Virus record (IMG/VR): IMGVR_UViG_3300020165_000007
Span: 124,001-188,000 of that record
Reading direction: 5' to 3' (one strand)
DNA: 64,000 nt
Made by a program: the position numbers and the translations under genes. The notes beneath the pieces are model-generated. The model was not told the origin of the DNA. It did not search any database and saw only the letters and a program-made list of their open reading frames with translations. Below, piece after piece: positions 3,899 through 25,008 of this stretch (positions are counted from its first letter, which is position 1; each line of letters opens with the position of its first letter).

Positions 3899-3899
3899 A

Positions 3900-6544: not shown

Positions 6545-6557
6545 TTTCTCCCCTTTT
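6533..6557 (+). terminator. Intrinsic terminator
   Basis: aaggggag-ataattt-ctcccctttt. Confidence 0.7.
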
Positions 6558-6558
6558 G

Positions 6559-6590
6559 TTTGGTTTAAAGTAAATAATTTAGTATATTTG
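6559..6590 (+). promoter_or_regulatory. Bacteroidota housekeeping-sigma promoter (-33 TTTG, -7 TAnnTTTG)
   Basis: TTTG 6559-62, 20-nt spacer, TATATTTG 6583-90. Confidence 0.8.
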
Positions 6591-6608
6591 TATACAAATC
6601 AACCACAA

Positions 6609-10962: not shown

Positions 10963-11014
10963 TGTAATTTTTCTTTATAAATAGTTTGTATAAAGAAAAA
11001 CTTTCACTATCTTT

Positions 11015-11584
11015 ATGTTTATGAAGAATCTATTACCCCTCCTTTTTTGTTTGATTTCATTAACGACCACATCTCAAATTACATGGGAAGGTGCTAAATG
11101 TTATTATATTGATGATAAGGGTAATGAGGTTGAAGTTTCATGTGAAGGATATATCCCAACACCAGTACCTCAGGTAAATATTGATTCTCTTTGTTGGGAA
11201 ATGGAAAAACGTTTTGTAAATACATTAAACGAATGGAGAGTAAATCATGGATTGAATGGATTAGAATACGATGATGACATGGAATCTCTACTGACTGTGC
11301 CTTGGAATGAAAATCAGGTAAAAACAGGTAAAGTTGGTCATGGTGAAGGGTATAACAGTTTCACAAATCGGATTGATTGGGCGGGTTTTGATACTTGTGG
11401 TGAATGTTGTGGGTCTAATCATAGGTCGGATGTTAATAATGTTTCTCAGTTTTTTTTACAGTATCAAAAAAGTCCCCCACACTGGAAAATTTTAACAAAT
11501 AGTAAGTATAACTATATTTCTGTATCAGTTCTTTATGACCGAGAAACAAATACTTATTATTCTGTAGTAAATGTTCGAAAGTGA
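11015..11584 (+). CDS. Secreted CAP/SCP-domain protein
   Basis: Signal peptide; LNEWRVNHGL, GH, GEC and SPPHWKIL motifs. Confidence 0.75.
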   Translation: MFMKNLLPLLFCLISLTTTSQITWEGAKCYYIDDKGNEVEVSCEGYIPTPVPQVNIDSLCWEMEKRFVNTLNEWRVNHGLNGLEYDDDMESLLTVPWNENQVKTGKVGHGEGYNSFTNRIDWAGFDTCGECCGSNHRSDVNNVSQFFLQYQKSPPHWKILTNSKYNYISVSVLYDRETNTYYSVVNVRK

Positions 11585-11615
11585 TTTGATTGTTTAAGAT
11601 TTATATTTATATTTG
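11585..11615 (+). promoter_or_regulatory. Bacteroidota-type promoter for tmRNA
   Basis: TTTG 11585-88, 19-nt spacer, TATATTTG 11608-15. Confidence 0.75.
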
Positions 11616-11634
11616 TAGTGTTCTTTGAAAATAT

Positions 11635-12021
11635 GGGGGTGTTTTATGGATTTGACCGGTATGGTCAGGTGTAGAGTGCACGTAGTGAGAGGATACCTAT
11701 CACTTTAATCTACGGTTTCAATTTGTAACAGGCGAAACTTTCGCAAAACTTCAGGCTGTCGGTTTACTCCGCACTGAAGAGGTTTACGCTGCCTAAGGCA
11801 TCGTTTACCACGGGTCGGTCAGGACGTTAACCTTGGAACAGAAGTCCGTTGTAGTGGTGGAAAAATGACTGAACCCTAAATCGAGTCATACATCTATTGT
11901 CAGTGGAGGATGTTAAAATTCAACTGAATATTTCGGATTATTAAGAATTAATAATGAACTAAACGTGTAGGACTCTATATTTGAAATATTTGGGACCTGG
12001 GTTCGAGCCCCAGCACCTCCA
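11635..12021 (+). ncRNA. ssrA: tmRNA with tag (A)GETFAKLQAVGLLRTEEVYAA*
   Basis: 5' GGGGGTG...GGATTTGAC; 3' GACCTGGGTTCGAGCCCCAGCACCTCCA; G3-U70 acceptor pair; tag ORF 11731-11796 ends in AA-stop. Confidence 0.93.
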
Positions 12022-12027
12022 CAAATA

Positions 12028-12060
12028 AATCCCCTATTGTTTTGGCAGTAGGGGATTTTT
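12028..12060 (+). terminator. Terminator after tmRNA, overlapping the next promoter
   Basis: aatcccctattg...cagtaggggattttt; TTTG 12041 and TATATTTG 12065-72 overlap it. Confidence 0.7.
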
Positions 12061-12102
12061 GACTTATATTTGTATCACAATCACCACATAAACAATATTA
12101 AT

Positions 12103-12690
12103 ATGACTCAAGAACAAGTAATCGAAGAAGTGCAGAACTACAACGGAACCAACAATTTTATGAACTCACTCAAAAGAGGTCTTAATAAGTTTAACTCACT
12201 GACCGATAATCAAACCGCAGCAGCTATTCGTGTTATCGAGGGTGCTCGTCGTCATGAACAGGCTCAACAGCGTTTGAATATCACTTTGGTTGGTGATACC
12301 ATCAAGATTGGTCGTAAGATTGCATTGGGTATTAAAGAAGAGTATGGTCTTGAGTTTCACCCCATCCTTATCGATGTAACTGCGGTTACGGGTATGACTG
12401 ACCGAGCACTTCGGGTCAAAGGCAAGTTGACGAAAGAAAACGGAGGTGTATGTCGTTGTTGCGCTAAAACCCTTACTGATGATGTTTCTAAGTTGACAGG
12501 TATCGGTCCTGTGTGTTCTAAGTATGTTGGTGTTGCTCATCCTCGTAGCGCTTACGACACTGTCGCAATCGAGAATTATAAAAAGGATATGTCTCGAAAA
12601 ATTGATGAGATTGGTGAGTTTGAGTTTTGGATTCCTAAAAGGGCGATTGTTAAGTGGAATGGTATGGGAGGAGTGATGGTGAAGATGTGA
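12103..12690 (+). CDS. Zn-binding DUF6011-like protein
   Basis: CRCCAKTLTDDVSKLTGIGPVC motif; host-type promoter upstream. Confidence 0.65.
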   Translation: MTQEQVIEEVQNYNGTNNFMNSLKRGLNKFNSLTDNQTAAAIRVIEGARRHEQAQQRLNITLVGDTIKIGRKIALGIKEEYGLEFHPILIDVTAVTGMTDRALRVKGKLTKENGGVCRCCAKTLTDDVSKLTGIGPVCSKYVGVAHPRSAYDTVAIENYKKDMSRKIDEIGEFEFWIPKRAIVKWNGMGGVMVKM

Positions 12691-12772
12691 GAAGGGGGGG
12701 TAACACCCCCCTTTTTTGTTTTTTATATATTTGTAGATATTTATTACAATAAACTGTAAAAAAATATTTAAT

Positions 12773-13003
12773 ATGGGAACAGCAGAAATTAAAAGTCTTA
12801 TTAGACACGGATTAACCGCAATTGGTACTTTGTTGGTACTAACAGGTTTGAACACATGGATACCTTTGGTAGACTTATTAACTGAGAATTTAGATTCAGT
12901 AATAAATGCTATCGAGGTTCTAATAGGTTTAGGAATAGCGGTCTTTGGATTCTTTAGGAACAAAGAGAGATTCGAAATAGTTAAGGAGGCCGAGGCCAAA
13001 TAA
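12773..13003 (+). CDS. Small two-TM membrane protein, putative holin
   Basis: IRHGLTAIGTLLV hydrophobic helix, a second TM and a charged C-terminus. Confidence 0.55.
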   Translation: MGTAEIKSLIRHGLTAIGTLLVLTGLNTWIPLVDLLTENLDSVINAIEVLIGLGIAVFGFFRNKERFEIVKEAEAK

Positions 13004-13020
13004 TAAAAACCTTTAAAATT

Positions 13021-13052
13021 AAAACCCCCGAACAAATCGGGGGTTTTTTTTT
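13021..13052 (+). terminator. Intrinsic terminator
   Basis: aaaacccccga-acaaa-tcgggggtttttttt. Confidence 0.8.
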
Positions 13053-13094
13053 GACTAATAAATTATTATATTTTATATTATAAAAAAAAACATA

Positions 13095-13592
13095 ATGAGT
13101 AACGTACTTGTACTAAATTCTGATTTTTCACCATTAAATATCACAACTTTACATAGAGGGTTTATATTGGTGAACAAAGGTAAAGCAGAAATAGTAAAAA
13201 AGGGAGACCGTGATATCGTCACCACTATAGGTAAATTTGTTCGTCCCGTAATTATAAGGTTATTAAATTATATTAGATATCGAAGAACCTCATTAAAAGT
13301 TAATAGAAAAAGAATTTTTAAAAGAGATAAGTCTACCTGCCAATATTGCGGTTCAAAAAAAAATCTAACTATCGACCACATTATACCTCGTTCTCGTGGA
13401 GGTAAGAATACTTGGAAAAATTTGGTTACTTGTTGTTCTAGATGTAATGTTACAAAAGGTAATAAAACCCCTAACGAGTGGGGTGTTAAGTTAATAAATA
13501 GACCTCATGAACCCTCTGTATTTTCTTCCTTATTATACGAAGAAGCTGAGGTTATATGGGACGATTTTAGGAAAGGATTTTCTACTTATTGA
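13095..13592 (+). CDS. HNH endonuclease (McrA-like)
   Basis: RDKSTCQYCG...LTIDHIIPRSRGG...NLVTCCSRCNVTKG. Confidence 0.9.
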   Translation: MSNVLVLNSDFSPLNITTLHRGFILVNKGKAEIVKKGDRDIVTTIGKFVRPVIIRLLNYIRYRRTSLKVNRKRIFKRDKSTCQYCGSKKNLTIDHIIPRSRGGKNTWKNLVTCCSRCNVTKGNKTPNEWGVKLINRPHEPSVFSSLLYEEAEVIWDDFRKGFSTY

Positions 13593-13648
13593 CCGTTATA
13601 AACTATTTATAGGTGTAGTTCTTCATAAACAAGTAAACCTATAAATTA

Positions 13649-16645
13649 ATGAATTTTACTTTTTTTAATAAGGCACGCCGTATGCTTTTAATACCTTTAA
13701 TGCTCTTGTTTTCAGTAGTATTAAGGGCTCAATGTGACGTTTTTATAGAACAGGGTTCTGTAGTCGTCACTGATAATGGTAGTGGTGTCAAGTTTCAATT
13801 TGACGTTACAAACAATTCGGGTAGTGAATGGGAAGGGGACGTACTTAAGATGTATTGGTCACTTAATTCAAGTGCACCAATATGGACCATAGATTATACC
13901 TCAAACAACAATGTTGGACCCTTACCTCCTGGTCAGACTAGGACAATAACAACCCCTTGGTTCGACATTCCAAATCTCCCTTCATGGTTTCCTGAAGACC
14001 CAGGTCCTGGTGGAGTAAATGATTTATCGTGGGAAGAGTCTATGGAATGGGCGTATTATGGTTTATCTTTCCCTTTTGATGGGGCTTGGTCACAATTTAA
14101 TCTTAGGTTAGGTAGTTGTGGGTTAGCTGATGGCGCTTGGGTATATAACTCAGACGGAACACCATACTACGGACCTTTTAATACTGATTGTCCTGATGTA
14201 AATAATGATGCGTTTTGTGATTGTGATGTTAATTTCCTTGGATTTGACCCTGAAACATATGACGTAAGTATTGAAGTAGTATCACATTGGAACTGTGGCA
14301 CTTCTTTAAATACGGTGGGTCAGTCGGGACAAATGGATTATGTAAATATGGTTCAAATAGGTGCACACGTACCTGGTTGGGATTATGAATGGGGTTGTAC
14401 CGCATCTGAATATCATTTAGGATGGACATTTGATAATCCTGTATCATTTGCTGAGTATTACGCGGGTGATACAATAAATTATAATATGTTTGCTGACGAT
14501 ACATTTTATGATGATTGTTTCCAAAGTATCTTAGAGTCTGATACATTAACTTCATGTTTGGAAGTTGTATTATGGCAAATAAACTATTCGGAAACTGCGA
14601 TTATTGGTGAAATTGATGGTGGTTGGGCCCAGACGTGTGGATTATGTGCGGACCAAACACAGTTTTATCCTGACATATCAATGGAATTAAATTCTATTAA
14701 TGTATGTGATGCACCACCCCCTATTTACCCTGGTTGTACTGACCCTTTAGCAGAAAACTTTAATGGTAATGCGGGGTATGATGACGGGACTTGTACTTTT
14801 GCACCTGTATACGGTTGTCAAGACCCTATCGCTTGTAATTATAATCAACAAGCAACCGAAAATGATGACTCATGTATATATTGTGATACTCCAGAGGGAG
14901 AAGAATTATGTAATGAATATCATGGCGATAGCACTTATTGGGAGTTTTATAGTAATCTATTCGACTGTGATGATGAAGTAATATATACTCCTGACGCAGG
15001 TGGATATGTTTCATTTGTAAATGCAGTGTGTGATGACGGGATAGTTTCTAACGAAATTAGTATAATAGTAGTTAACCCTGATACGGGTAATTTTAATTCA
15101 AATGACACATTATTTGTGTATTGTGTAGAAGTACCTGAATTAGGTCTTGATACTTGTTTAAATGGTAATTTAAACGGTACTGATTGGATTGAACCTGGTG
15201 GGGGTCAGTTAATATGGACTATTAATGTACCTGATTTTATAACTCAACTAACAATTAATGTATATGATGTTGAAGGTGAGATTGATGAATATTCATATAA
15301 CAATACGTTCTTATACTTAAATAATATAAGTGACCCCGATGTATGTCTTGTTTTAGGATGTACAGACCCAATAGCGGAAAATTATAATCCGTTAGCAACT
15401 GAGGATGATGGAAGTTGTGAATATATGGTTGATTTATCATTAGATAGTATAACTATAAACGAATACTGTGACGGATTTACCCCATACTGGGTTCCTACGT
15501 TACATCTAAACAATCTAACCAATCCCGCGATAAATGAATACTGTATTAAAGTTCAAGTCTTAGGACAAACAAACGACACTATTTGTTTTAATGCGATGGG
15601 TACAACAATAAACTCATTCGGTGATATCTCTATTGAGTGGCCTAACCCCATATACTCATATGGTGTTGTTAGTGTACACGTTTTAGACGTAAATGGTGAG
15701 AGTCCTAACTCATGGGAAAATTTCGGAGAAGATGATAATATTAGTAATAATATACTTGTCCTTACAATCGGAGGTTCCGGAATTAATTGCAATGTTGCGG
15801 GATGTATCGACGATACTGCTAATAACTATAATCCTGACGCAAATGTGGATGATGGTAGTTGTACTTACGATATATTCGGATGTACCGATGAAAGCGCTAA
15901 TAATTACAATCCCAATGCGAATTTAGACGATGGTACATGTACGTATGATATTTATGGTTGTACAGATGAAGAAGCAAATAACTACAACTCAACAGCTAAC
16001 GTGGACGATGGGTCTTGTACTTATGACGTTTTCGGCTGTACAGACTCAACCGCAAATAATTATAACCTCTTAGCTACAGTCGATGACGGTTCTTGTGAAT
16101 ATGATGTATTTGGGTGTACTGATGAAAGTGCTAACAATTATAATTCACTTGCTAACGTGGATGATGGTAGTTGTACTTACGATATATTAGGGTGTACCGA
16201 TTTAAACGCTAACAATTATAATATGTTCGCAAATGTAAATGATGGGTCATGTGAATATGACGTGTTTGGATGTACTAACATGGACGCATTAAATTATAAT
16301 TTTGAAGCGACGATAGAAGATGGTACTTGTGTTTTTCCTAGTCCTTGTGATGAATTCGACGGTCAGGCATTTGCACCTAACGCATTTAGTCCTAATAATG
16401 ACGGTTTAAACGATTCTTGGGGGGTAATAACCGACGAAGAGTGTTGGAACACATGGGAAGTATCTATTTTCAATAGATGGGGTCAAGTGGTCTTTAAAAT
16501 CGATAATCCTAATGGAAGATGGGATGGAAGTTTTAATAATGGTGGGTATTACGTACAAGACGGAGTTTACGCTTACACAATTAGGGCAGTGGCATGGAAT
16601 TTGGAGGTCTTGGATACGAGTGGTTATATAACCGTTCTCAGGTAA
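13649..16645 (+). CDS. Large secreted Cys/Asp-rich repeat protein with T9SS type B C-terminal domain (gliding-motility-associated CTD)
   Basis: Signal peptide ending VLRA-Q; ten GCTD..A.NY...A..DDGSC repeats; C-terminal APNAFSPNNDGLND...IFNRWGQVVF...WDG...DGVYAY...GYITVLR. Confidence 0.88.
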   Translation: MNFTFFNKARRMLLIPLMLLFSVVLRAQCDVFIEQGSVVVTDNGSGVKFQFDVTNNSGSEWEGDVLKMYWSLNSSAPIWTIDYTSNNNVGPLPPGQTRTITTPWFDIPNLPSWFPEDPGPGGVNDLSWEESMEWAYYGLSFPFDGAWSQFNLRLGSCGLADGAWVYNSDGTPYYGPFNTDCPDVNNDAFCDCDVNFLGFDPETYDVSIEVVSHWNCGTSLNTVGQSGQMDYVNMVQIGAHVPGWDYEWGCTASEYHLGWTFDNPVSFAEYYAGDTINYNMFADDTFYDDCFQSILESDTLTSCLEVVLWQINYSETAIIGEIDGGWAQTCGLCADQTQFYPDISMELNSINVCDAPPPIYPGCTDPLAENFNGNAGYDDGTCTFAPVYGCQDPIACNYNQQATENDDSCIYCDTPEGEELCNEYHGDSTYWEFYSNLFDCDDEVIYTPDAGGYVSFVNAVCDDGIVSNEISIIVVNPDTGNFNSNDTLFVYCVEVPELGLDTCLNGNLNGTDWIEPGGGQLIWTINVPDFITQLTINVYDVEGEIDEYSYNNTFLYLNNISDPDVCLVLGCTDPIAENYNPLATEDDGSCEYMVDLSLDSITINEYCDGFTPYWVPTLHLNNLTNPAINEYCIKVQVLGQTNDTICFNAMGTTINSFGDISIEWPNPIYSYGVVSVHVLDVNGESPNSWENFGEDDNISNNILVLTIGGSGINCNVAGCIDDTANNYNPDANVDDGSCTYDIFGCTDESANNYNPNANLDDGTCTYDIYGCTDEEANNYNSTANVDDGSCTYDVFGCTDSTANNYNLLATVDDGSCEYDVFGCTDESANNYNSLANVDDGSCTYDILGCTDLNANNYNMFANVNDGSCEYDVFGCTNMDALNYNFEATIEDGTCVFPSPCDEFDGQAFAPNAFSPNNDGLNDSWGVITDEECWNTWEVSIFNRWGQVVFKIDNPNGRWDGSFNNGGYYVQDGVYAYTIRAVAWNLEVLDTSGYITVLR
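15800..16336 (+). repeat. Seven tandem 78-bp (26 aa) coding repeats
   Basis: GC[TI]D..ANNYN..AN.DDGSC.YD[VI]F units. Confidence 0.9.
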
Positions 16646-16659
16646 ACAATCGATTAAAT

Positions 16660-16690
16660 AAAAAAGTGACCTTCGGGTCACTTTTTTTTA
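16660..16690. terminator. Bidirectional terminator
   Basis: aaaaaagtgacc-ttcg-ggtcactttttt between convergent genes. Confidence 0.85.
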
Positions 16691-16759
16691 TATAAGAAAA
16701 AAGGACTGACACCGCCAGTCCTTTTCATAGATTTAATTTTACCCCCTTTTTTTAAAAGT

Positions 16760-17395
16760 TTATGAGAAGACCTTATCTCTAATGCCTCTCAATTTCGAGT
16801 CCATATTTGACTCAATGGAATCCAATAAAGATTCCAACGCCGTTGTAAACTTATCTTCAATATCTCTTTTAAATCTATCGTTATCAATTTGCTTCATCAC
16901 AATTTCTTTTGTCGTATCTGTAAGTCCTTCTAAGTATTTTTCTTCAAATTCTCTTGTGAATACATCGGCGATACTTCTCGGTAAGAACTTCTTATCCGTA
17001 AATATTTTAGAAAATTCCTCTTCTTCAATTTCTGATATTGTCTGAGACAATACATCCTTTTCAAAACCATCAATATTAAGTTTACCCTCTAAAAAAAATA
17101 ATAACTTATCTTTTAACGTGTCTATAACTTTAGAACCATCATCACCCATAATACCTTTAAGTGTCATAATTAAATCTTCATTAACTACGGATTCACTAAT
17201 ACCCATTTTTATCAAATGATTAGCCTCTAAAAATAATTTATTAAAGAATTTGGTGGTATGAATTTTAGAATTAAAGTTAACAGACTCAGATATAATACCT
17301 AATCTTCCTTTAACAATTTTAGATTCAGTAAGACTATTAAGTTTTTTAGTTTCTAATTCTATTAGATTCTTTTTAACTATGTGTTTTAGACTCAT
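16760..17395 (-). CDS. Hypothetical helical protein
   Basis: Start MSLKHIVKKNLIE, overlapping the upstream stop. Confidence 0.7.
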   Translation of the reverse strand: MSLKHIVKKNLIELETKKLNSLTESKIVKGRLGIISESVNFNSKIHTTKFFNKLFLEANHLIKMGISESVVNEDLIMTLKGIMGDDGSKVIDTLKDKLLFFLEGKLNIDGFEKDVLSQTISEIEEEEFSKIFTDKKFLPRSIADVFTREFEEKYLEGLTDTTKEIVMKQIDNDRFKRDIEDKFTTALESLLDSIESNMDSKLRGIRDKVFS

Positions 17396-18798
17396 TTTTC
17401 TTTGGGTTTCCACGCATTTATTGATTCTGTGAATTCCTTACTATTAACTCTCACTCTTTCATAAATATCTGAGTTTTCAGGTTTTTTAAGTTTAAAACCT
17501 TTTTTTTTTAAGTTTTCTAAAAATTCCTTCTGAGACTTCGTAAATTCGTTTGTAAGACCTTCCCCATTTAGTAATGACTGTAAACCTTTCTTTTCTTTAC
17601 CCTTCATAACCTCTTCAAAAGGTTGTTCTTTTTTCATCGATTGATTATGTGTGTTGATATAACTATCTCTTTGTATTTCCTCTTTTTCTCCCCCTCCAAA
17701 TTCAACTTCAGGTATCTTATCACCACCGACTATCTTAAAATCTCTATAATCAGGACCCTCATTATTAGTAATGGTAAAATATATTATACCACCGTCCAAT
17801 AATTTACCTAATCCATTCATCTGAGAATTAAAAGGAAGTTCAATATTTGCATTATTATAGTAAGAACCCAATCTAACGACAGGTTCTCCCGTTTTTTTAT
17901 CTTCACCTTTAGCGACTACTACTGACCTAATAAATGCAATATCTTCAGGATATTTTTTCATTAAATCCATAAATTCTTTATTTATTTCTTCACGGTCTTT
18001 ATCTGTAAAAACTACTTTTTGTTTTCCTTTGTCATTTGCAGTATAAAAATTAAATTCTTTTAACTTTTCATCTATTTTTTCTGGTATTGAATTTTCCATT
18101 TCATTTTCTTTTAATACGTCTTTTAACCCTTCATTAACTTTATTTGTACACCAATTAGAATCTGAAAATTCTTGCCATGAACCACTACTCGGCGGGTCTA
18201 TAAAACCCCATTTTCCACCTCTTTCTTCTATCGGTAACGGTATATTTTTTCTACCTGTTTGTGAATCAGCAAAAAAGACAATTCTCTCATCTTCGTATTG
18301 ACTGTTTGGTTCTCTTTGAACGAATATTAAAGGCCAAACTCTTCCACAAGGTATACCTTTCAAGTAATCGACCACATCTCTAAATTGTTGATTTACAGTT
18401 GAGCTTACACCGCTTTTACCTAAATTTAATTTCTCTTTTTTTAACTCTCTACCACTTTTTTGTCTTGCGGGTGGTGATGGCGGTGTTCCTCCTGGGTTAG
18501 GTTGTGTTGTCGAGCCTGTTGTAGGAGATGGCGTAGTACTACCAGTAGGAGGAGGTGTTGTACTTATCTTTTTAGTGTAGTACGCTTTTGGTGGCATTGG
18601 AGGACCTGTGACAGTATCATCTTGATATAATTTATAATCTGAAATGTTATCACCGTTAGATGTGATTTTGTTTTTTAAATTTGGTTCATTATCCGGTCCT
18701 TCCCATCCTGCACCAGAAGGTGTGCCACTTTTTTTTTCAGTTTGTCCCCAACTAGTGGATTGTTCGTTTAGTATTATTTTATTTGACATTATATTCAT
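17392..18798 (-). CDS. Multidomain protein with P/T-rich linker and a domain shared with the M23 peptidase
   Basis: KIILNEQ leader; CGRVWP...WGFID...WQEFSDSNWCTNK segment. Confidence 0.7.
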   Translation of the reverse strand: MNIMSNKIILNEQSTSWGQTEKKSGTPSGAGWEGPDNEPNLKNKITSNGDNISDYKLYQDDTVTGPPMPPKAYYTKKISTTPPPTGSTTPSPTTGSTTQPNPGGTPPSPPARQKSGRELKKEKLNLGKSGVSSTVNQQFRDVVDYLKGIPCGRVWPLIFVQREPNSQYEDERIVFFADSQTGRKNIPLPIEERGGKWGFIDPPSSGSWQEFSDSNWCTNKVNEGLKDVLKENEMENSIPEKIDEKLKEFNFYTANDKGKQKVVFTDKDREEINKEFMDLMKKYPEDIAFIRSVVVAKGEDKKTGEPVVRLGSYYNNANIELPFNSQMNGLGKLLDGGIIYFTITNNEGPDYRDFKIVGGDKIPEVEFGGGEKEEIQRDSYINTHNQSMKKEQPFEEVMKGKEKKGLQSLLNGEGLTNEFTKSQKEFLENLKKKGFKLKKPENSDIYERVRVNSKEFTESINAWKPKEK

Positions 18799-20651
18799 TT
18801 TGATTTAAAATCACCATTATCATATACATAATAAGTATCAGTTCCATTACCTTTTCTTGACACTACATACCATGTTTTACCACCGTCCTCACCTGCTTTT
18901 TTCGCAGATAAGTAATTATATACATCCTCACTTAAATTATCCCTTACGAATGATTTGAAACTATCTTCCTCATTCTTATACGTAACAATCTCGGCAGATG
19001 GTAGAAGATTACGGACCTTATTTACTATTTCCATAATTATTCCATCAAATTCACTCATGTCGTACTTTCCTTGTGAGGCTGTTTCTATAAATGCATCAAC
19101 TATAGAATAACCCATACTGTCCTGAACGCTACCTAAACCTCCAGGTACAAGCCTTTCAATAATATTAACCATAGTTCCAACAAAGCTATTAGGGTCATCT
19201 TCCCCTTTCTGTCTAAGAACATCAAAAAGAACTCCAACTCTTTCGTAGGCCCATTCACTTAATCCTTGTTTCCATATTGTATTAAAATCAATTTTAAAAT
19301 TATTTAAATCCGTATCAAACATATCGGAAAGCCCGTCTAATAATGAGTTCCAACCAGACTCAATTAAACCTCTCAGAATATCAAATACAAATATAATAAC
19401 CGATTGTGCAAACCAACCTACAAAATAACCAACAAGTGATTGTGCCAAATAAACTAATGCATATTTCAACTTTTTACCTCCAGTTTCTCCTGCGGATGTC
19501 CTAATTAAACCCAAATACTGCTTATTTAAACCTGCAAATTGATTTGTAAGCATAAATTGACCTACTGACGTTCTAGGGTCAATTAATGATTTTACGGCCT
19601 CCATTCTTTGACCTTTAGTTAATAATTGTTTTACTGTTAATAATAATTCACCTGAAAATGACTTCATAACGTCTCCCATTATTTCTCCCACACCCTCTCC
19701 GGACTTCTCCCAAGTGTCATTAAAAATACTAAAAAACGGTATTTCACCATCCCTAATTAAATTTGTTATTTCAGAATCTAAACCTGCATCGGCAAGAACT
19801 TCTGCGGCCGCTCCGTCTTTTTTAATTTCTAACTGGTTTAATAATCTTGTTATTGCAACTGCATAAGCTTCTGTAATTTCTTTAATTTTTTTATCTGAAT
19901 TTTGTTGACTTTTGGCAATTGCGACATCAGTTATGTAACCCGCATTTAATTCCTTAATTTCCTGTTTTACCTTATCAAAACTTTTTACAAACAATGTAAA
20001 GAAATCTTGAATAAATAATGTTGGAGTTTTATCATCAATAACTTTTCTGAGCTTTCTCATTTGTCTCTTACTTAGTTTAGTAGGGGCTACACCTGATAAA
20101 GTATCTACAAAACTACTTGGTTTATTAACGTATATATCTAATTGTTTTTTTACAGTATCAAAAATCCCATTTACATTAATAGGTTTTTGTGGTGAGTCAC
20201 CAACAACACGATTTAATGCCGTTACTAACTCGGTACCGGGTTTCTTCATTCCTTTTCTTAATTTTTCTAAAAATTCTCTCTCACTCATACTATTCTTTCT
20301 TTGGATATCCTTTAAAAATCCTTTATAAAATTCTAATGCAAGTTCATCGTCGTCATTTATAAGTTTACCCAATAGAGTTTTTTCAGTTTCACCCATTTCG
20401 GATACTCTACCATTAAAATCTTCTAAAATATAAATAAGACTATCAAAATTTTCTCTTTTGAACGTTGTACCACCTATTTCTATTTCTAAAAAATCACTTT
20501 TTTTAAGTGCCTTATTGACATATTTTAATATGTTATCGTATACACTGCTACCAATACTTTCTTTTAATATCGTTTTAGGTAAAGACATAATTTCCTTCAT
20601 CCTATGTATTTCAATAAGAATATTAGGGTTAGTTAAATGTAATAGGTCCAT
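18795..20651 (-). CDS. Large helical protein with a hydrophobic segment
   Basis: Leader ILIEIHRMKEIMSL...ILKE; hydrophobic YALVYLAQSLVGYFVGWFAQSVIIFVF. Confidence 0.7.
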   Translation of the reverse strand: MDLLHLTNPNILIEIHRMKEIMSLPKTILKESIGSSVYDNILKYVNKALKKSDFLEIEIGGTTFKRENFDSLIYILEDFNGRVSEMGETEKTLLGKLINDDDELALEFYKGFLKDIQRKNSMSEREFLEKLRKGMKKPGTELVTALNRVVGDSPQKPINVNGIFDTVKKQLDIYVNKPSSFVDTLSGVAPTKLSKRQMRKLRKVIDDKTPTLFIQDFFTLFVKSFDKVKQEIKELNAGYITDVAIAKSQQNSDKKIKEITEAYAVAITRLLNQLEIKKDGAAAEVLADAGLDSEITNLIRDGEIPFFSIFNDTWEKSGEGVGEIMGDVMKSFSGELLLTVKQLLTKGQRMEAVKSLIDPRTSVGQFMLTNQFAGLNKQYLGLIRTSAGETGGKKLKYALVYLAQSLVGYFVGWFAQSVIIFVFDILRGLIESGWNSLLDGLSDMFDTDLNNFKIDFNTIWKQGLSEWAYERVGVLFDVLRQKGEDDPNSFVGTMVNIIERLVPGGLGSVQDSMGYSIVDAFIETASQGKYDMSEFDGIIMEIVNKVRNLLPSAEIVTYKNEEDSFKSFVRDNLSEDVYNYLSAKKAGEDGGKTWYVVSRKGNGTDTYYVYDNGDFKSK

Positions 20652-20724
20652 AGTTTTTTATAATAAATACTTGGCAGAATAAAAAAAAATTAATATATTT
20701 GTAGAGAACAAAATTAATTCAATA

Positions 20725-20949
20725 ATGAAATACTCAGTTAAGGAAGTTGTTATTTATAAAAAAGAAACAGTAACAATAAGGGAAGTACATAAAGTTGGTA
20801 GTACTTATGCTTATGTTCTGAGTAGTGGTGAAAGTTGTTTTGAGGATGAATTACGTAAATCATCTAAAGACCGTTATGTCTCACATGTCAATAACTTAAT
20901 TAGAGAGAATATGGACGATATTTTAAAGTACTGTTTTAGTCCTGTCTAA
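20725..20949 (+). CDS. Small hypothetical protein
   Basis: 74 aa, TATATTTG promoter element upstream. Confidence 0.65.
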   Translation: MKYSVKEVVIYKKETVTIREVHKVGSTYAYVLSSGESCFEDELRKSSKDRYVSHVNNLIRENMDDILKYCFSPV

Positions 20950-22747
20950 AAACAGATGAGTCGCAGCTATATTGTGTTAGTCTCATATCTGGTTCCGACT
21001 TTCTTTTACGTAATCCATCATAAAAATATATGGTGCCGTCAATATCATAGGATATCTCTTGTTCCCTTTCAACACTACTATCGTTTTTTCTTCTATTATA
21101 TTTTATTTCTTTTGCGTTTGGGTGATTGATAACACACGGATAGTCTTCTTTAAATTTATTCTTTTTTTCTTCGTCGCTTTTTGGTTTATCATCTGTACCC
21201 GAAACTAGTTCAAATATAGTTTTATTATTAGATTCCTCTAAAGTACGTAACGCTTCATAAAGTGATTCCATTGACTCCTCAGCTACTTTATCAGGGTTTT
21301 GACCTAACGCCCTTATAGTAGACGCCCCTAAAATTGTAGTAAATATACCACCCATCTGTAATCCCATATTTAAAGTAGATTTTAAAAAGTTTGTTTCTTC
21401 AAGTATTTCAGATACGGCCTCTAAAGATTTTTTAGTTAATGGTTTTGACATACCAGACTCATTCAATTTAATAATTGCGTCGTCTACATATTTTTTAAAA
21501 TTACCCGCCTTTGTGATTAATTCTCTACTTGAGGCATAAAAAGAATAAACAAGAGACCTTTCTTCTTTTGACAGATTTTTTAACGCCGACCAAATTACTG
21601 TAGGTTTAACCTCACCTGACAAGAATTTAATATAGTTTGTTATAAATCCAATAACCCTAACGAATGATGTTTTACCTATCTTTGTCCCTAATTGTTTAAA
21701 TACTGAAGAGCCTATGTCACCGAATAAAGGTATCAAACCGATAGATAATGATATAAGTGCACCAAATTTATCATTTTTATTTTTCCATAAATCGTAAGCA
21801 TGTGCAAATTCAATAGAAAATGATGCGACTGGATTTATAAAAAACATAAGACCAGCTAATAAATCACACCAAAATTCTTCATAGGCATAATCAATACCTA
21901 TTAATTTAAATGCCCCAACATTCTTACCTTCAGTACCAAACCATTCATCAAAAATACTATCCTCACCACAAACAAGTGAAGATAATTGTTTGAAACCAAT
22001 CTCTGACATTTCAGAAGCTTCATTCCACCATATTTCTAAACCACTTGCTTGTAAAACTTCTTTTTTAGGTTGTTGGTAGATATTATTGTTATCATTTTTA
22101 TAGTATTTAAAATACCAATCAATACTAAAAGGATTATTTTTATTACTCTCAGTGTTTAGATTCTTAGATATTTTACCCCCTAATAGAGTACGATAATTAG
22201 TGCCGTTTATTTTTAGTTTTTGAGAAACGCCATTAGGGTAAATTCTCTGTAGTTGGTCATATAACGAATTTCTTAATCCACTCTCAAACTCTTCTCCGTA
22301 TTTTTCACCGTATTCATTAAACCAATCGTCCATAGTTTTATCTGATGAGTTATTAATAGGAGACTCGATAAAACTTTCATACAACTCCTTCCAGTTAGAA
22401 TTAATTGTTTTTATTACTTTAGTGTTTTCCGGAAAATACATTACTCCTTTTGGTGTGTTATACATACACCACCCTTTATACACGGGGTGTTCGACTGTTC
22501 CTGCAACTGCTAAATCAGGACTACCACAATTTTTAGGGTACCCGAAATCACTCCCTGTTATATCTTCATCCGATTGATATTGTTTAATTTTAATAGGGTC
22601 ATTCTTTATTGAGGATGATATTTTACCTACCTCAACATCTCTTAATGGTCCTGATGGTTTTTTATCTTGTTCAGATAAAACTTTAGACCTATCGTAATTC
22701 ATAAGTCTATTCATCTCCACTAACTGTATTCTAATATTTTCCTCCAT
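20936..22747 (-). CDS. Large protein with hydrophobic hairpin (pre-toxin/membrane-inserting-like)
   Basis: Leader QLVEMNRLMNYDRSKVLSEQ; GALISLSIGLIPLFGDIG resembles pre-toxin TG-type helices. Confidence 0.6.
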   Translation of the reverse strand: MEENIRIQLVEMNRLMNYDRSKVLSEQDKKPSGPLRDVEVGKISSSIKNDPIKIKQYQSDEDITGSDFGYPKNCGSPDLAVAGTVEHPVYKGWCMYNTPKGVMYFPENTKVIKTINSNWKELYESFIESPINNSSDKTMDDWFNEYGEKYGEEFESGLRNSLYDQLQRIYPNGVSQKLKINGTNYRTLLGGKISKNLNTESNKNNPFSIDWYFKYYKNDNNNIYQQPKKEVLQASGLEIWWNEASEMSEIGFKQLSSLVCGEDSIFDEWFGTEGKNVGAFKLIGIDYAYEEFWCDLLAGLMFFINPVASFSIEFAHAYDLWKNKNDKFGALISLSIGLIPLFGDIGSSVFKQLGTKIGKTSFVRVIGFITNYIKFLSGEVKPTVIWSALKNLSKEERSLVYSFYASSRELITKAGNFKKYVDDAIIKLNESGMSKPLTKKSLEAVSEILEETNFLKSTLNMGLQMGGIFTTILGASTIRALGQNPDKVAEESMESLYEALRTLEESNNKTIFELVSGTDDKPKSDEEKKNKFKEDYPCVINHPNAKEIKYNRRKNDSSVEREQEISYDIDGTIYFYDGLRKRKSEPDMRLTQYSCDSSVFRQD

Positions 22748-22759
22748 ATCAAATAAATA

Positions 22760-23440
22760 TTACGTTAAAGTATTTGATTTACCTCTATTAATTCCAGATT
22801 CCCATTTACTATTTTGGTCAATCATATTTCCCTTACCTCTACTTATATTAGAATTCCATACATTAATAGTTAATTGATTTGCAGGTCCACGAGTTAAACC
22901 TGTTTCCCATGTAGAAGTATTACTGTTTGTAGAACTAGAATCTCCTCCTGTAGTTTCTCCTCCACCTTCATCTTGTTCGTTAAACTCAGACTCTACATTA
23001 CCATATATTTCGGGATACCTAAGACCAAACATTTTAAGTAATTCACCTGCCTTAGCATTCGCTTCATCCTCTATTTTACCACCAACATTTTGTATTTTAC
23101 CTTCAAGTTCACCGTCTTCATTTTGATGATGATGAACCAATTCATGTGCGACCGACCTCATAACGTCTTGTAACGCTCTTTCTTTAGTATATACCGTAAC
23201 TTCAGCATTCTCTATATCTGCATTTTCACCGTCTTCGTACCTATAAACCGCAGTTGTATCTACTTTGGATTTATCCTCCGTGTAATCAATACGAACGTTA
23301 TTTTTTATATTTAATTCTTTAACAGTTAAATCAACAAACTTATCTAATAAAATTCTTTCATTATTATCAAATGATTCATCACCCTCATTAATACTCATAA
23401 GGGTTTTTATTCTATTGATATCTTCGTTAAGTAAATTCAT
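22760..23440 (-). CDS. HExxH metallopeptidase-like protein
   Basis: RSVAHELVHHHQ...EDEANAKAG; leader LLNEDINRIKTLMSINE. Confidence 0.65.
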   Translation of the reverse strand: MNLLNEDINRIKTLMSINEGDESFDNNERILLDKFVDLTVKELNIKNNVRIDYTEDKSKVDTTAVYRYEDGENADIENAEVTVYTKERALQDVMRSVAHELVHHHQNEDGELEGKIQNVGGKIEDEANAKAGELLKMFGLRYPEIYGNVESEFNEQDEGGGETTGGDSSSTNSNTSTWETGLTRGPANQLTINVWNSNISRGKGNMIDQNSKWESGINRGKSNTLT

Positions 23441-23457
23441 ATTCAATAAATACTACG

Positions 23458-24432
23458 TTAGAAAGAACATGACGGAACTGTAATTTTTTTTTCACTTGTT
23501 TTATTGTTTATTTTTATTACAACAGATATTTCATGAGCACCACCTGTGGTGGGACCTAATTGTGATATAGTAACATCATAATTGTAAAAGAACATTAATT
23601 CTCCCGTATCTACACCCATATTTAATAATAAAGCATCCCTATAAGAGTATCCTTCTACAAGTCTTAACCCACCACCAAATAAGAATTTACCTTTTCTAAT
23701 ATTATTATTTAATGTTAGTTGTGTGAACTGACCTTGTCGTAGTATTGAAATTGATGGTGTATAAGTCACGTCTTCATTCCTATCGGTAGATTTATCTAAG
23801 GGTATTATCACCCCTCCGTGAATATTATATTTTACTGGTAAGTAACTTTCTCCATATATTAACGTTTGGTTCGGTTGGTTTATATGTGACACACTAAATC
23901 CTGCAAACCATTTATGATTAAATAAAAGTATTCCTGTACCTACATCAAAATAATTAACTTTAAAGTTATTTAAAAAAGATTCATTTGTGTAATTAGTAAA
24001 CGCGACACCGTTAAAAGAATCTTCAAAGAACAGTTTTTTACTATCTATGAAATTTTGCTTATAACTAAATTCCAAACCAAATTTAATATTTAAATTATTA
24101 GTTAGTTTTTGTTGATTACTATAATAGGTGTTAAATGAATTTAATGAGTATATTCCATTGGCGGACCTATCATTCATCATTAATATACCGAAACCACTTT
24201 TCAAATCTCTAATATATTGTTCGTAAGTTACAACGCTAGTTACGTATTGACTACCTAATGATGGCCAATGATTTCTATATGTCATACTTAACTCAGGACA
24301 ATTCCTTGACCCAGCGAATGCGGGATTCAAGTACAAAACACTACTGTTTATTTGTGAAAATGAAACGTCTTGAGAAAAACCTATTGCAAACAAACTTAAA
24401 AACCCAAAAATTAATAAAATCTTCTTAATCAT
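23458..24432 (-). CDS. PorP/SprF-family type IX secretion outer-membrane protein
   Basis: Signal peptide then QDVSFSQ, LYLNPAFAG, YRNHWP, HINQPN, YNYDVT, GAHEISV and terminal CSF; beta-barrel-like pattern. Confidence 0.85.
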   Translation of the reverse strand: MIKKILLIFGFLSLFAIGFSQDVSFSQINSSVLYLNPAFAGSRNCPELSMTYRNHWPSLGSQYVTSVVTYEQYIRDLKSGFGILMMNDRSANGIYSLNSFNTYYSNQQKLTNNLNIKFGLEFSYKQNFIDSKKLFFEDSFNGVAFTNYTNESFLNNFKVNYFDVGTGILLFNHKWFAGFSVSHINQPNQTLIYGESYLPVKYNIHGGVIIPLDKSTDRNEDVTYTPSISILRQGQFTQLTLNNNIRKGKFLFGGGLRLVEGYSYRDALLLNMGVDTGELMFFYNYDVTISQLGPTTGGAHEISVVIKINNKTSEKKITVPSCSF

Positions 24433-24498
24433 ACCTATAAATATCAAAAAATATGTCTATTTATTTGTAGATTAACTAAATATACTTATATTTGTAAT

Positions 24499-25008
24499 AT
24501 GAAACACTACCTCACCCTTTTATCTTTAGTTTTACTCTTCTCAGGATGTTATCAATATGCGGAACATACCTACCCTACTATGGACGGCACATATATCCTT
24601 AGGTCTATTACTGTAAACAGTACAGATATATTAAATTCCGAACTTGTAGACGACGACCCTCTTTCATTAATCTACCCTAACCCTATTGGTCCTTTGGATT
24701 CCATGAAAGTAAATAAGAGTCGTATTAGTATTAGTGGTGACCGTTTATTTGCTGGATACTACTTAGAAAATGGAGGAGACCATTGGAGAGTAGAATATCC
24801 AGTTAATATTACTCAAGACTTCGTTACAGGTCGATGGGTTAATATGAATGTTTCTTATAATACCCCACAACTTAACACGTATCGTCATTACGTAATTATA
24901 GAGGATGGTTTAGAATATTTAATTTTAGAATGTCCAAAACAATATCCAGAGGGTGTTGAAGGTAATGAATATAGTTATTCATTAACTTTTTATAGGGAAG
25001 GACCTTAA
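24499..25008 (+). CDS. Putative lipoprotein
   Basis: Lipobox LFSG-C; promoter TTTG 24464 / TATATTTG 24487. Confidence 0.7.
   Translation: MKHYLTLLSLVLLFSGCYQYAEHTYPTMDGTYILRSITVNSTDILNSELVDDDPLSLIYPNPIGPLDSMKVNKSRISISGDRLFAGYYLENGGDHWRVEYPVNITQDFVTGRWVNMNVSYNTPQLNTYRHYVIIEDGLEYLILECPKQYPEGVEGNEYSYSLTFYREGP

What the first reader, a model, noticed from the sequence alone, without database searches (positions are those of the whole stretch)
13649..24432. Phage carries a type IX secretion type B cargo and a PorP/SprF-family adaptor
Seen: 13649..16645 has a signal peptide, ten Cys/Asp repeats and a type B CTD (PNAFSPNNDG.ND...FNRWG...WDG). 23458..24432 has the PorP/SprF signature (QD..FSQ, LNPAFAG, YRNHW, GAHEI). 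Both have the TATTTAT upstream motif. Established: in Bacteroidota, type B CTD proteins such as SprB need a cognate PorP/SprF-like barrel for T9SS export. Inference: the phage supplies a cargo plus matching adaptor that uses the host T9SS to put a phage protein on the infected cell surface. Possible roles are superinfection blocking, adhesion or aggregation, grazer defence, or jamming gliding motility. I know of no described phage system like this.
Basis: partly seen in the sequence, partly recalled or inferred. Interest (0 to 1): 0.88.

Follow-up and report, generated by a model that had tools for sequence, protein, structure and literature searches.

The report
Jumbo phage encodes T9SS cargo and PorP
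A roughly 270-kb T4-like marine phage of Flavobacteriales carries a secreted, adhesin-like protein with a type IX secretion "type B" export tag and also its own copy of the outer-membrane barrel (PorP/SprF) that normally anchors such proteins; phage-encoded cargo is already known, and the new part is a virus bringing a piece of the secretion machinery itself.

Summary
ORF 13649..16645 (+, 998 aa) has a signal peptide, ten Cys/Asp repeats and a C-terminal type B T9SS domain above curated cut-offs. ORF 23458..24432 (minus strand) is a PorP/SprF-family protein, modelled as a 14-strand PorV/FadL-like barrel.

The contig is viral. A contig identical to the window's first 10.9 kb carries a T4-type terminase, gp20 portal and gp21 prohead protease just beyond the window start. 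No contig carrying these genes exceeds about 310 kb.

The pair keeps its layout in relatives whose PorP is only 60-65% identical, and both genes are under purifying selection. Four points weaken the "matching pair" reading:
- The genes are convergent, 6.8 kb apart, and separated by an unrelated hypervariable cassette.
- One syntenic relative has an intact cargo but no PorP.
- The most similar bacterial PorPs sit in porU-porV-porP-gldJ loci, not beside cargo genes.
- TATTTAT is a genome-wide motif that also precedes the head genes, not a motif specific to the pair.

Phage T9SS cargo has been published (Bellas 2020), and type B tags are common on viral contigs. PorP lay near only 5 of 80 such loci. 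I found no report of a phage PorP. The biological role is unknown.

The parts
13604..13614 (+). TATTTATAGGT motif 45 nt upstream of the cargo start; probable late-class promoter element
   Evidence: The same 11-mer precedes PorP. The 430-aa gene that follows the prohead protease in the head module also has TATTTAT at -45.
13649..16645 (+). Type B T9SS cargo gene (998 aa). Order of parts: signal peptide, beta-sandwich modules interspersed with Cys/Asp repeats, a seven-copy tandem repeat array, then the C-terminal domain (CTD).
   Evidence: It is the only type B CTD hit in the window with my own HMM. No other T9SS CTD was found in the window's large or secreted proteins that were scanned.
13649..13729 (+). 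Signal peptide (aa 1-27, predicted cleavage ...RA|QC, leaving Gln at +1)
   Evidence: By inspection; helix 2-20 in the model. No dedicated signal-peptide predictor was available.
15800..16276 (+). Tandem array of 78-nt (26-aa) Cys/Asp repeat units (GCTD..ANNYN..A.VDDGSC.YD)
   Evidence: A copy-number difference of exactly one 78-nt unit separates L026 from L011/L012. The repeat also occurs in a Synechococcus phage S-CAM3 'virion structural protein'.
16373..16636 (+). Type B T9SS C-terminal domain (aa 909-996)
   Evidence: PF13585 62.3 bits; TIGR04131 45.6 bits, above its cut-off of 35. Model pLDDT is 80-89 here. dN/dS is 0.09-0.17 among relatives.
16698..16726 (.). 13-bp hairpin flanked by A and T runs, in the gap between the convergent cargo and 211-aa genes; terminator-like on both strands
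16760..17395 (-). Conserved 211-aa protein that always lies next to the cargo gene; no signal peptide and no family hit
   Evidence: Present in every relative, including L116.
17392..23440 (-). Hypervariable cassette of four genes (468, 618, 603 and 226 aa) between PorP and the 211-aa gene. Three of the four share an N-terminal leader, none has a signal peptide, and none has a T9SS signature. Not part of the T9SS pair.
   Evidence: The stretch of about 18536..23462 is replaced in otherwise 99.9%-identical genomes (L003, L004).
23458..24432 (-). PorP/SprF-family outer-membrane beta-barrel gene (324 aa; signal peptide aa 1-20, cleavage ...FS|QD)
   Evidence: AF2 model pLDDT 82.4, 14 strands. Best PDB fold matches are PorV in the SprA translocon (8gl6_F, 6h3i_F) and FadL. 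dN/dS 0.06-0.27.
24433..24443 (-). TATTTATAGGT motif immediately upstream of the PorP start codon
24499..25008 (+). 169-aa predicted lipoprotein (…LFSGC) transcribed divergently from PorP behind a TAnnTTTG host-type motif. No family hit. Present in the window, L013/L014, L015/L113 and PorP-less L116 lineages; no homologue found in L011/L012.
   Evidence: A link to the T9SS pair is not shown.
13095..13592 (+). HNH endonuclease gene directly upstream of the cargo gene, syntenic in relatives
   Evidence: The HNH + cargo block is inverted in L014 relative to L013.

Best explanation
The window is part of a roughly 270-kb T4-like jumbo phage that infects marine Flavobacteriales. The phage encodes two envelope proteins that can only work through the host's type IX secretion system.

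One is a 998-aa modular protein: beta-sandwich modules plus ten Cys/Asp repeats, with no recognisable enzyme domain, so adhesin-like. It ends in a type B CTD. The other is a PorP/SprF-family 14-strand outer-membrane barrel.

Most likely mechanism:
1. Both proteins cross the inner membrane by Sec. Each has a signal peptide with Gln at +1.
2. The barrel is inserted into the outer membrane by the host's barrel-assembly machinery.
3. The cargo passes the host SprA/Sov translocon, driven by the host GldKLMN motor.
4. The cargo stays on the surface of the infected cell, bound non-covalently through its uncleaved CTD to the phage PorP. This is as described for SprB-SprF and PG1035-PorP.

Because each anchor is used stoichiometrically, bringing its own PorP would let the phage display many copies without depending on host PorP-like proteins. 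Both genes carry the TATTTAT motif that also precedes the portal and prohead protease genes, so they are probably made late.

Most likely role (low confidence): remodelling or masking the surface of the doomed cell and its debris. This would reduce adsorption of competitor or progeny phage to T9SS-dependent surface receptors. Adhesion or aggregation is the alternative.

Shown: family membership, the predicted barrel fold, the viral genome, synteny and purifying selection. Inferred: export route, PorP-cargo binding, timing and role.
For: - Family hits are above curated cut-offs.
- The PorP model has 14 strands and is PorV/FadL-like, matching the published description of PorP-like proteins (PMC9143113).
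- The genome is viral. L021 is 100% identical to window 1-10898 and continues into Terminase_6N, Portal_T4 (265.7 bits) and Peptidase_S77. A homologue of a T4-like cyanophage virion protein lies at 47304-50765. The window matches IMG/VR UViGs of up to 270 kb, and more than 100 assembly blocks hold no contig above 1 Mb.
- The PorP ... cargo layout is conserved in lineages whose PorP is 60-65% identical and whose cargo passenger is as little as 42% identical.
- dN/dS is 0.06-0.27 for PorP, 0.09-0.17 for the CTD and 0.12-0.35 for the passenger, at dS of at least about 0.8 for the diverged-lineage comparisons.
- The cargo is the only T9SS CTD protein found in the window.
- The nearest bacterial PorPs (31-39% identical) are almost all from Flavobacteriales MAGs that carry porU, porV and gldJ. 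Host-type TAnnTTTG motifs are present upstream of 12 genes.
- The late-class motif precedes portal, prohead protease, PorP and cargo.
- Type B cargo binds PorP-like anchors, keeps its CTD and is PorV-independent (PMC9143113).
- Phage resistance in Flavobacterium maps to gliding and T9SS genes (titles of 10.1101/2020.10.02.323337 and PMC9804748).
Against: - No experiment or expression data exist. Export, binding and timing are all inferred.
- The two genes are 6.8 kb apart, convergent, and separated by unrelated genes. This is unlike the usual cargo-porP adjacency.
- L116 is a syntenic relative with an intact cargo but no PorP at the site. L024 and L025 carry cargo homologues with no PorP within 10 kb.
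- Of 80 IMG/VR loci with a type B CTD, 75 have no PorP in the DNA retrieved, up to 10 kb each side; some loci are cut by contig ends. A phage PorP is therefore not generally required for such cargo.
- The most similar bacterial PorPs are gldJ-linked core PorPs, not cargo-linked SprF-type genes.
- In the tree the phage clade sits on a long branch with unresolved placement.
- The passenger's function is unknown. Fold search gave only generic tandem beta-sandwich matches with TM-scores near 0.08.
- Only about 84 kb of the roughly 270-kb genome was seen.
Confidence: 0.6

Rival explanations
1. The phage PorP acts on the host T9SS itself and is not the cargo's private anchor. It could replace the host's core PorP after host shut-off so that secretion continues. 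Alternatively it could act as a dominant-negative subunit that blocks secretion or gliding and so removes T9SS-dependent receptors. In this reading the cargo uses whatever PorP-like protein is available.
For: - About 70 of the 81 most similar bacterial homologues lie in the core porU-porV-porP-gldJ(-murF) locus, not beside type B cargo.
- PorP presence varies among relatives while the cargo is retained (L116; L024 and L025).
- Most viral type B cargo loci have no PorP nearby.
- P. gingivalis PorP also contacts PorE, PorK and PorN (PMC9143113).
Against: - In the tree the phage clade is not nested inside the gldJ-linked clade.
- PorP and cargo stay linked in five diverged lineages.
- P. gingivalis core PorP is itself the anchor of the only type B protein there, so the 'core' and 'anchor' roles are not exclusive.
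Confidence: 0.2
2. The 998-aa protein is a virion fibre or decoration protein. Its C-terminal beta-sandwich is used for binding rather than secretion, and the PorP gene is functionally unrelated.
For: - The Cys/Asp repeat is shared with a Synechococcus phage S-CAM3 'virion structural protein'.
- The gene carries the late-class upstream motif.
- BFVD fold matches include phage tail and fibre proteins at weak scores.
Against: - An N-terminal signal peptide is conserved in relatives. It would send the protein out of the cytoplasm, where virions assemble.
- The CTD sits at the extreme C-terminus and passes the curated type B cut-off.
- It lacks the N-terminal leader shared by the neighbouring putative packaged proteins.
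Confidence: 0.07
3. The two genes are recently captured host genes with no role for the phage, or the region is an assembly chimera.
For: Both families are otherwise bacterial. An HNH endonuclease and a recombination-prone cassette lie next to them.
Against: - The same arrangement appears in at least 23 independently assembled contigs and several IMG/VR UViGs.
- GC content is even across the region.
- Phage genes lie on both sides.
- No bacterial homologue exceeds 39% identity among 185,579 species genomes.
- Strong purifying selection holds across saturated synonymous divergence.
Confidence: 0.03

Closest known systems
SprB-SprF of Flavobacterium johnsoniae (type B cargo plus cognate PorP-like barrel)
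   Same: [quoted passage not shown] Neither locus has a PorE-like (OmpA_C) partner gene nearby. Gorasia et al. proposed that this arrangement marks cargo anchored only to the barrel (PMC9143113).
   Different: - Here the pair is encoded by a virus.
- The genes are not adjacent (6.8 kb apart, convergent).
- The cargo is 998 aa, with beta-sandwich modules and Cys/Asp repeats, and shows no similarity to SprB outside the CTD.
- The phage PorP is at most 39% identical to any bacterial homologue.
- Dependence of the cargo on this PorP is untested.
PorP-PG1035(-PorE) complex of Porphyromonas gingivalis
   Same: A single PorP pairs with a single type B CTD protein that stays on the surface with its CTD intact, independently of PorU and PorV. 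The most similar bacterial relatives of the phage PorP are likewise 'core' PorPs, next to a PorK paralogue (gldJ).
   Different: There is no PorE-like gene in the phage locus. The phage cargo is much larger and modular. It is not known whether the phage PorP contacts the host PorK/N-type rings.
'Cryophage' T9SS cargo genes (Bellas et al. 2020, PMC7468147)
   Same: A phage encodes proteins with T9SS sorting domains, and hijack of the host T9SS was proposed, with superinfection exclusion as a possible role. Those cargo genes were variable regions of the genome; here a hypervariable cassette lies next to the pair.
   Different: Cryophage has type A CTDs on enzymes (endoglucanase, GH39, PA14 protein), and PorP is not mentioned (0 occurrences). 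Here the cargo is type B, has no enzyme domain, and comes with a machinery or anchor component.
Phage-encoded envelope proteins that block receptors (T5 Llp, lambdoid Cor, T4 Imm/Sp); cited from my own knowledge
   Same: These are phage-made envelope proteins that change what the infected cell presents to other phage. This is the role I rank first.
   Different: Those are small lipoproteins or inner-membrane proteins that use general export routes. None uses a dedicated secretion system with its own anchor. The analogy is functional only and untested here.

Membership tests
T9SS type B CTD cargo (TIGR04131 / PF13585) | A C-terminal domain that matches the family model above its curated cut-off and lies at the extreme C-terminus | tested here: met
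   TIGR04131 45.6 bits (cut-off 35). PF13585 62.3 bits (cut-off 27), at aa 909-996 of 998.
T9SS type B CTD cargo (TIGR04131 / PF13585) | An N-terminal Sec signal peptide | tested here: met
   By inspection: a basic n-region, a hydrophobic core and ...RA|QC, with a helix at aa 2-20 in the model. It is conserved in relatives. No dedicated predictor was available.
T9SS type B CTD cargo (TIGR04131 / PF13585) | Secretion depends on the T9SS (SprA, GldKLMN) and on a PorP-like protein, and is independent of PorV; the CTD is retained | not testable with these tools
   Needs reporter-fusion and mutant experiments. The features are defined in PMC9143113.
PorP/SprF family (TIGR03519 / PF11751) | A match to the family model above its curated cut-off, over the full length | tested here: met
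   TIGR03519 179.7 bits (cut-off 90.55), aa 2-307 against profile positions 1-291 of 292. PF11751 155 bits. All 24 columns invariant across 30 phage and bacterial homologues are kept.
PorP/SprF family (TIGR03519 / PF11751) | A signal peptide plus a 14-stranded FadL/PorV-like outer-membrane beta-barrel | tested here: met
   AF2 model: pLDDT 82.4, pTM 0.78, 14 strands. Foldseek top hits are PorV chains 8gl6_F and 6h3i_F, and FadL. This is a prediction, not a solved structure. No PDB sequence hit was found.
PorP/SprF family, cognate (SprF-like) adaptor subtype | The gene lies directly beside the gene of its type B cargo | tested here: not met
   The genes are 6.8 kb apart, convergent, with five unrelated genes between them. 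Looser linkage is conserved in relatives but absent in L116. The nearest bacterial homologues are gldJ-linked, not cargo-linked.
PorP/SprF family, cognate (SprF-like) adaptor subtype | Physically binds the cargo's CTD and is required for its secretion or anchorage | not testable with these tools
   No multimer prediction or experiment was available.
T4-like (Straboviridae-type) myovirus head module | gp20-type portal, T4-type large terminase and gp21-type prohead protease on the same molecule | tested here: met
   L021 is 100% identical to window 1-10898. It carries PF07230 at 265.7 bits, PF03237 at 36.3 bits and PF03420 at 81 bits. The major capsid protein was not identified.
Phage-encoded T9SS cargo (as in Cryophage, PMC7468147) | A T9SS sorting domain on an ORF of a bona fide phage genome | tested here: met
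   The difference is type B here against type A there.

The most novel reading that the evidence does not exclude
This phage clade carries a self-contained two-gene surface-display module: a type B cargo plus its own PorP anchor. That would make PorP the first component of the T9SS machinery known to be encoded by a virus. The phage could then coat the infected cell, late in infection, with its own rapidly evolving adhesin-like protein, independently of the host's PorP repertoire. It would also give a small natural cognate pair for studying how type B CTDs recognise PorP-like barrels.
Probability: 0.5. Interest if true: 0.72.

Novelty: new variant of a known kind. Interest (0 to 1): 0.62.

Why it matters
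Phages are known to borrow host export routes, and T9SS-tagged phage proteins have been noted before. A virus that also brings the outer-membrane anchor or adaptor would show that T9SS specificity components are mobile and can be supplied in trans.

It would give T9SS researchers a compact natural cargo-PorP pair, 998 aa and 324 aa, with several natural allelic variants. One of these is a chimeric PorP whose C-terminal third is swapped while the cargo stays the same. Such variants could be used to test how type B signals are recognised and anchored.

For marine phage ecology it points to late remodelling of the surface of infected Flavobacteriales, an important group of bloom-associated bacteria. 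That could affect superinfection, progeny loss on debris, or particle attachment.

Tried and rejected
- **Cultured relatives.** DNA similarity of 13000-25000 to 50,697 phage records gave no match. tblastn of PorP against the same collection gave no match. No cultured relative is available.
- **Solved structures.** Sequence and profile searches with PorP found nothing in the PDB. The cargo search gave only a chance-level hit.
- **Cargo fold.** The model has medium-low confidence (pLDDT 68, pTM 0.31). Whole-model Foldseek gave only generic tandem beta-sandwich matches with TM-scores near 0.08, so the passenger has no functional assignment.
- **Intervening genes as T9SS-related.** Rejected for the five ORFs at 16760-23446. 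They have no signal peptide, no CTD and no family hit, and three of them share a different N-terminal leader.
- **The 169-aa lipoprotein as a PorE-like partner.** It has no OmpA_C or other hit. No homologue was found in L011/L012, and it is present in PorP-less L116. Unsupported.
- **Other T9SS cargo in the window.** The secreted M43 peptidase, CAP protein and Endonuclease_NS, and the lipoproteins that were scanned, carry no type A or B CTD.
- **Phage PorP as a recent copy of the gldJ-linked host PorP.** The tree places the phage clade outside that clade on a long branch. The origin is unresolved.
- **Broken cargo genes in L012 and L026.** Each has a different single-base insertion in an otherwise identical sequence. 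I treat these as possible assembly errors. The fragments were not read through.
- **Literature.** Searches for a phage-encoded PorP or other T9SS machinery gene found none. The library does not cover all journals.

Full report

Yes. ORF 13649..16645 (+, 998 aa) matches PF13585 CHU_C at 62.3 bits (cut-off 27) and the NCBIfam type B sorting domain TIGR04131 at 45.6 bits (cut-off 35). Both matches fall at its last 90 residues. It starts with a signal-peptide-like segment and contains ten Cys/Asp repeats of about 26 aa. The last of these form a 78-nt tandem array.

ORF 23458..24432 (324 aa) matches PF11751 at 155 bits and TIGR03519 (PorP/SprF) at 179.7 bits (cut-off 90.55), over its full length.

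Two corrections apply. The PorP gene is on the minus strand, convergent with the cargo gene and 6.8 kb away. Five unrelated minus-strand ORFs lie between them.

**2. Is it a phage?**

Yes.
- The PorP protein occurs, 100% identical, on IMG/VR UViGs of 270,383, 115,240 and 82,734 bp and on at least 23 independently assembled contigs. From L108 coordinates, the window corresponds to 124001-188000 of the 270-kb UViG.
- L021 is 100% identical to window 1-10898. Within 10 kb beyond the window start it carries a T4-type large terminase, a gp20-type portal (PF07230, 265.7 bits) and a gp21-type prohead protease (PF03420, 81 bits).
- Inside the window, 47304-50765 encodes a homologue of a virion structural or fibre protein of T4-like cyanophages (phrog_5838 at 693 bits; 36-39% identity).
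- There are 12 tRNA genes, and also a DnaK, a ClpB-like ATPase, PPK2 and an Amidase_2 protein. Most ORFs scanned have no family hit.
- Among more than 100 collection blocks holding window proteins, the longest contigs are 0.2-1 Mb class (270-309 kb) and none exceeds 1 Mb.
- GC content is even across the region. A host-phage chimera is excluded.

Several lines point to a Flavobacteriales host:
- The best 80 bacterial PorP homologues, at only 31-39% identity, are almost all from Flavobacteriales MAGs.
- Twelve genes carry a TAnnTTTG upstream motif typical of Bacteroidota promoters (promoter type from my own knowledge).
- The window's signal peptides leave Gln at +1, the Bacteroidota 'Q-rule' (rule from my own knowledge).

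**3. Anatomy**

*Cargo.* It consists of a signal peptide, then beta-sandwich modules (roughly aa 30-110, 190-310, 450-540 and 596-680) interspersed with single Cys/Asp repeats. A seven-copy repeat array follows, and then the CTD, where model pLDDT is 80-89. No enzyme domain was found. Fold search gave only generic tandem Ig-like matches. The gene looks monocistronic: a motif lies at -45, and a 13-bp hairpin at 16698-16726 sits in the convergent gap.

*PorP.* It has a signal peptide and a 14-strand barrel (pLDDT 82.4). The best structural matches are PorV in the SprA translocon and FadL. This is what is published for PorP-like proteins (PMC9143113).

*Intervening genes.* They have no signal peptide and no T9SS feature. 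The 226-, 603- and 618-aa proteins share an N-terminal leader of the type I-N-R-I-K-x-L-M ... [LI]-x-E. In genomes otherwise 99.9% identical, about 4.9 kb of this block is replaced by different genes that keep the same leader. In L004 the left breakpoint lies inside PorP near codon 200. Its C-terminal third is therefore a different allele, while the cargo is unchanged.

**4. Co-occurrence**

The layout PorP - variable cassette - 211-aa gene - cargo - HNH is kept in four further lineages:
- L011/L012/L026 (PorP 62% identical)
- L013/L014 (65%)
- L015/L113 (61%)
- L004

In L026 the cargo passenger is down to 42% identity.

Both genes are under purifying selection at high synonymous divergence (dS at least about 0.8 for the diverged-lineage comparisons). 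dN/dS is 0.06-0.27 for PorP, 0.09-0.17 for the CTD and 0.12-0.35 for the N-terminal passenger.

The coupling is not absolute.
- L116 is a syntenic relative, with the lipoprotein, the 226-aa-like gene, a cassette, the 211-aa gene and an intact 691-aa cargo with signal peptide and CTD. It has no PorP at the site.
- L024 and L025 carry cargo homologues with no PorP within 10 kb.
- A scan of IMG/VR with a type B CTD alignment found 211 matching stretches. Of the best 80 loci, only 5 had a PorP in the DNA retrieved (up to 10 kb each side), and all 5 belong to this clade.
- Type B-tagged proteins are thus common in phage contigs (see also the BFVD annotations, and huge-phage hits). A phage PorP is rare.
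- A second, unrelated PorP clade does exist on other IMG/VR contigs (L016-L019), including a 405-kb UViG.

**5. Origin of the phage PorP**

Homologues fall into two groups: a tight phage clade at 58-100% identity, then a gap down to 39% or less for bacterial proteins. About 70 of the 81 most similar bacterial homologues lie in a conserved porU-porV-porP-gldJ(-murF) locus. That is the core T9SS neighbourhood, not a position beside a type B cargo gene.

In a maximum-likelihood tree the 12 phage PorPs form one clade (SH-aLRT 100) on a long stem of 1.58. The clade lies outside the gldJ-linked clade and its placement is unresolved. The acquisition is therefore old, and the donor paralogue cannot be named.

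**6. Expression class**

TATTTAT lies within 30 nt upstream of 19 of 75 genes on the coding strand, against 2.3 +/- 1.5 in shuffled upstream segments and 5 on the opposite strand. This set does not overlap the TAnnTTTG set. The overall count in the window is at chance, so the signal is positional.

The same motif precedes the portal (-17), the prohead protease (-19), a 246-aa head-module gene (-20) and the 430-aa gene after the protease (-45). PorP has it at -11 and the cargo at -45. I infer that both belong to the morphogenesis (late) class. This is an inference from motif sharing, not from expression data.

**7. Mechanism**

Established knowledge (PMC9143113):
- Type B cargo needs Sec, the SprA/Sov translocon and a PorP-like protein.
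- It does not need PorV or PorU, and it keeps its CTD.
- It is held on the surface by binding its PorP-like barrel.
- Cargo whose PorP-like partner has no PorE-like neighbour was proposed to be anchored only to the barrel.

Applied here, the phage makes the barrel and the cargo, and the host supplies Sec, barrel assembly, the translocon and the motor. The result would be a phage adhesin-like protein displayed on the infected cell. A phage-supplied anchor makes sense if anchors are consumed one per cargo molecule.

I rank surface masking or exclusion first for the role. In Flavobacterium, phage resistance maps to gliding and T9SS genes, and the Cryophage authors proposed the same role for phage cargo. 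Late timing would fit protection of progeny from debris better than classical early exclusion. Adhesion or aggregation is equally compatible with the sequence.

The rivals are given separately: PorP acting on the host T9SS itself (0.2), cargo as a virion protein (0.07), and neutral passenger genes or a chimera (0.03).

**8. Comparison with what is known, and novelty**

The system works like SprB-SprF or PorP-PG1035. By HMM and fold both proteins are family members. The usual adjacency of a cognate pair is not met, and binding could not be tested.

Phage-encoded T9SS cargo (type A) and the hijack idea were published in 2020 (PMC7468147). T9SS sorting domains in gut phage contigs were noted in 2019 (PMC6949934). 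I found no report of a phage-encoded PorP/SprF or any other T9SS machinery gene.

I therefore rate it a new variant of a known kind. It is interesting mainly to T9SS and phage-host specialists.

**9. Limits**
- Only about 84 kb of the roughly 270-kb genome was examined.
- No signal-peptide predictor, multimer prediction or expression data were available.
- The cargo model has low global confidence.
- The literature library is incomplete.

Noticed in passing
window 17392-23440 (-); L003 and L004 ~10900-15400; L011, L013, L015 ~11000-17200: A hypervariable cassette lies between PorP and the cargo. In genomes otherwise 99.9% identical, about 4.9 kb (window ~18536-23462) is replaced by different genes. 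At least three haplotypes exist. In L004 the left breakpoint lies inside PorP near codon 200.
   Followed up: partly
window 3325-3834, 9538-10962, 18795-20651, 20936-22747, 22760-23440 (all -); weaker look-alikes at 31334, 32292, 58232, 60811, 61059, 63064: A shared N-terminal leader of about 20-30 aa (e.g. ..INRIKTLMSINE.., ..VNRMRQIMGLE..) ends in [LI]-x-E. It sits on otherwise unrelated proteins, mostly behind the TATTTAT motif. An HMM built from the five window copies hits 12 proteins of the alternative cassettes in relatives. A gp21-type prohead protease lies nearby, so this may be a capsid-targeting propeptide, as on T4 internal proteins (T4 facts from my own knowledge). Not tested.
   Followed up: partly
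whole window; L021 14480-19295: There are two non-overlapping upstream motif classes. TAnnTTTG (Bacteroidota host-type) precedes 12 genes, such as the ClpB-like gene and the lipoprotein at 24499. TATTTAT(AG) lies 10-25 nt before the ATG of 19 genes, including the portal and prohead protease. These are probably early/host-type and late/phage-type promoters.
   Followed up: partly
window 39842-42370, 51295-51369, 52336-52421: Twelve tRNA genes, ten of them in one array: Ser, Lys, Leu x2, His, Arg, Ile (anticodon tat), Thr, Tyr and Asn. Met and a second Ser lie elsewhere.
   Followed up: no
window 4523-6544, 28685-31270, 35494-37374, 52379-53113; L021 17448-17633: The phage is rich in chaperone and protease genes: a ClpB-like double AAA ATPase, DnaK (60-64% identical to DnaK of 630-735-kb 'uncultured phage' records), a ClpP-like protease and a DUF4314-PPK2 fusion. 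A ribosomal protein S21 gene lies just outside the window.
   Followed up: no
window 11015-11584, 34884-35471, 44219-46234, 46397-46621, 59256-59690, 62337-62750: Several further phage proteins have signal peptides with Gln at +1 or lipoprotein signals: a CAP-domain protein, a non-specific DNA/RNA endonuclease, an M43 metallopeptidase (671 aa) and small lipoproteins. None of those scanned has a T9SS CTD (46397-46621 was checked against Pfam only).
   Followed up: partly
L016 (IMGVR_UViG_3300027899_000001, 405 kb), L017, L018, L019: A second, separate clade of PorP-like genes (26-28% identical) occurs on other IMG/VR contigs.
- L016 has a type A CTD protein next to PorP.
- L017 has a 2015-aa type B ORF directly upstream of PorP.
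- L019 has a PKD + CHU_C protein near PorP.
- L018 has a 1911-aa beta-helix protein after PorP.
Whether these contigs are truly viral was not checked.
   Followed up: partly
L116 (IMGVR_UViG_3300024262_000047) 3672-11656: A syntenic relative with an intact 691-aa cargo (signal peptide, repeats, CTD), the 211-aa gene and the lipoprotein. The 226-aa-like gene abuts the lipoprotein gene, with no PorP between them.
   Followed up: yes
L012 and L026 cargo genes; L026 versus L011: In two assemblies the cargo gene is split by different single-base insertions. These may be assembly errors, and the fragments were not read through. L026 also has one extra 78-nt repeat unit, so repeat copy number varies.
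   Followed up: partly
window 13095-13592; L013 versus L014: An HNH endonuclease gene always lies next to the cargo gene. The HNH + cargo block is inverted in L014 relative to L013, although their PorP proteins are identical.
   Followed up: no
window 47304-50765 (-): A 1153-aa homologue of a virion structural or fibre protein of T4-like cyanophages (S-PM2, S-RSM4; 36-39% identity over 70-79% of its length), in a phage whose host is inferred to be a Flavobacteriales bacterium.
   Followed up: no
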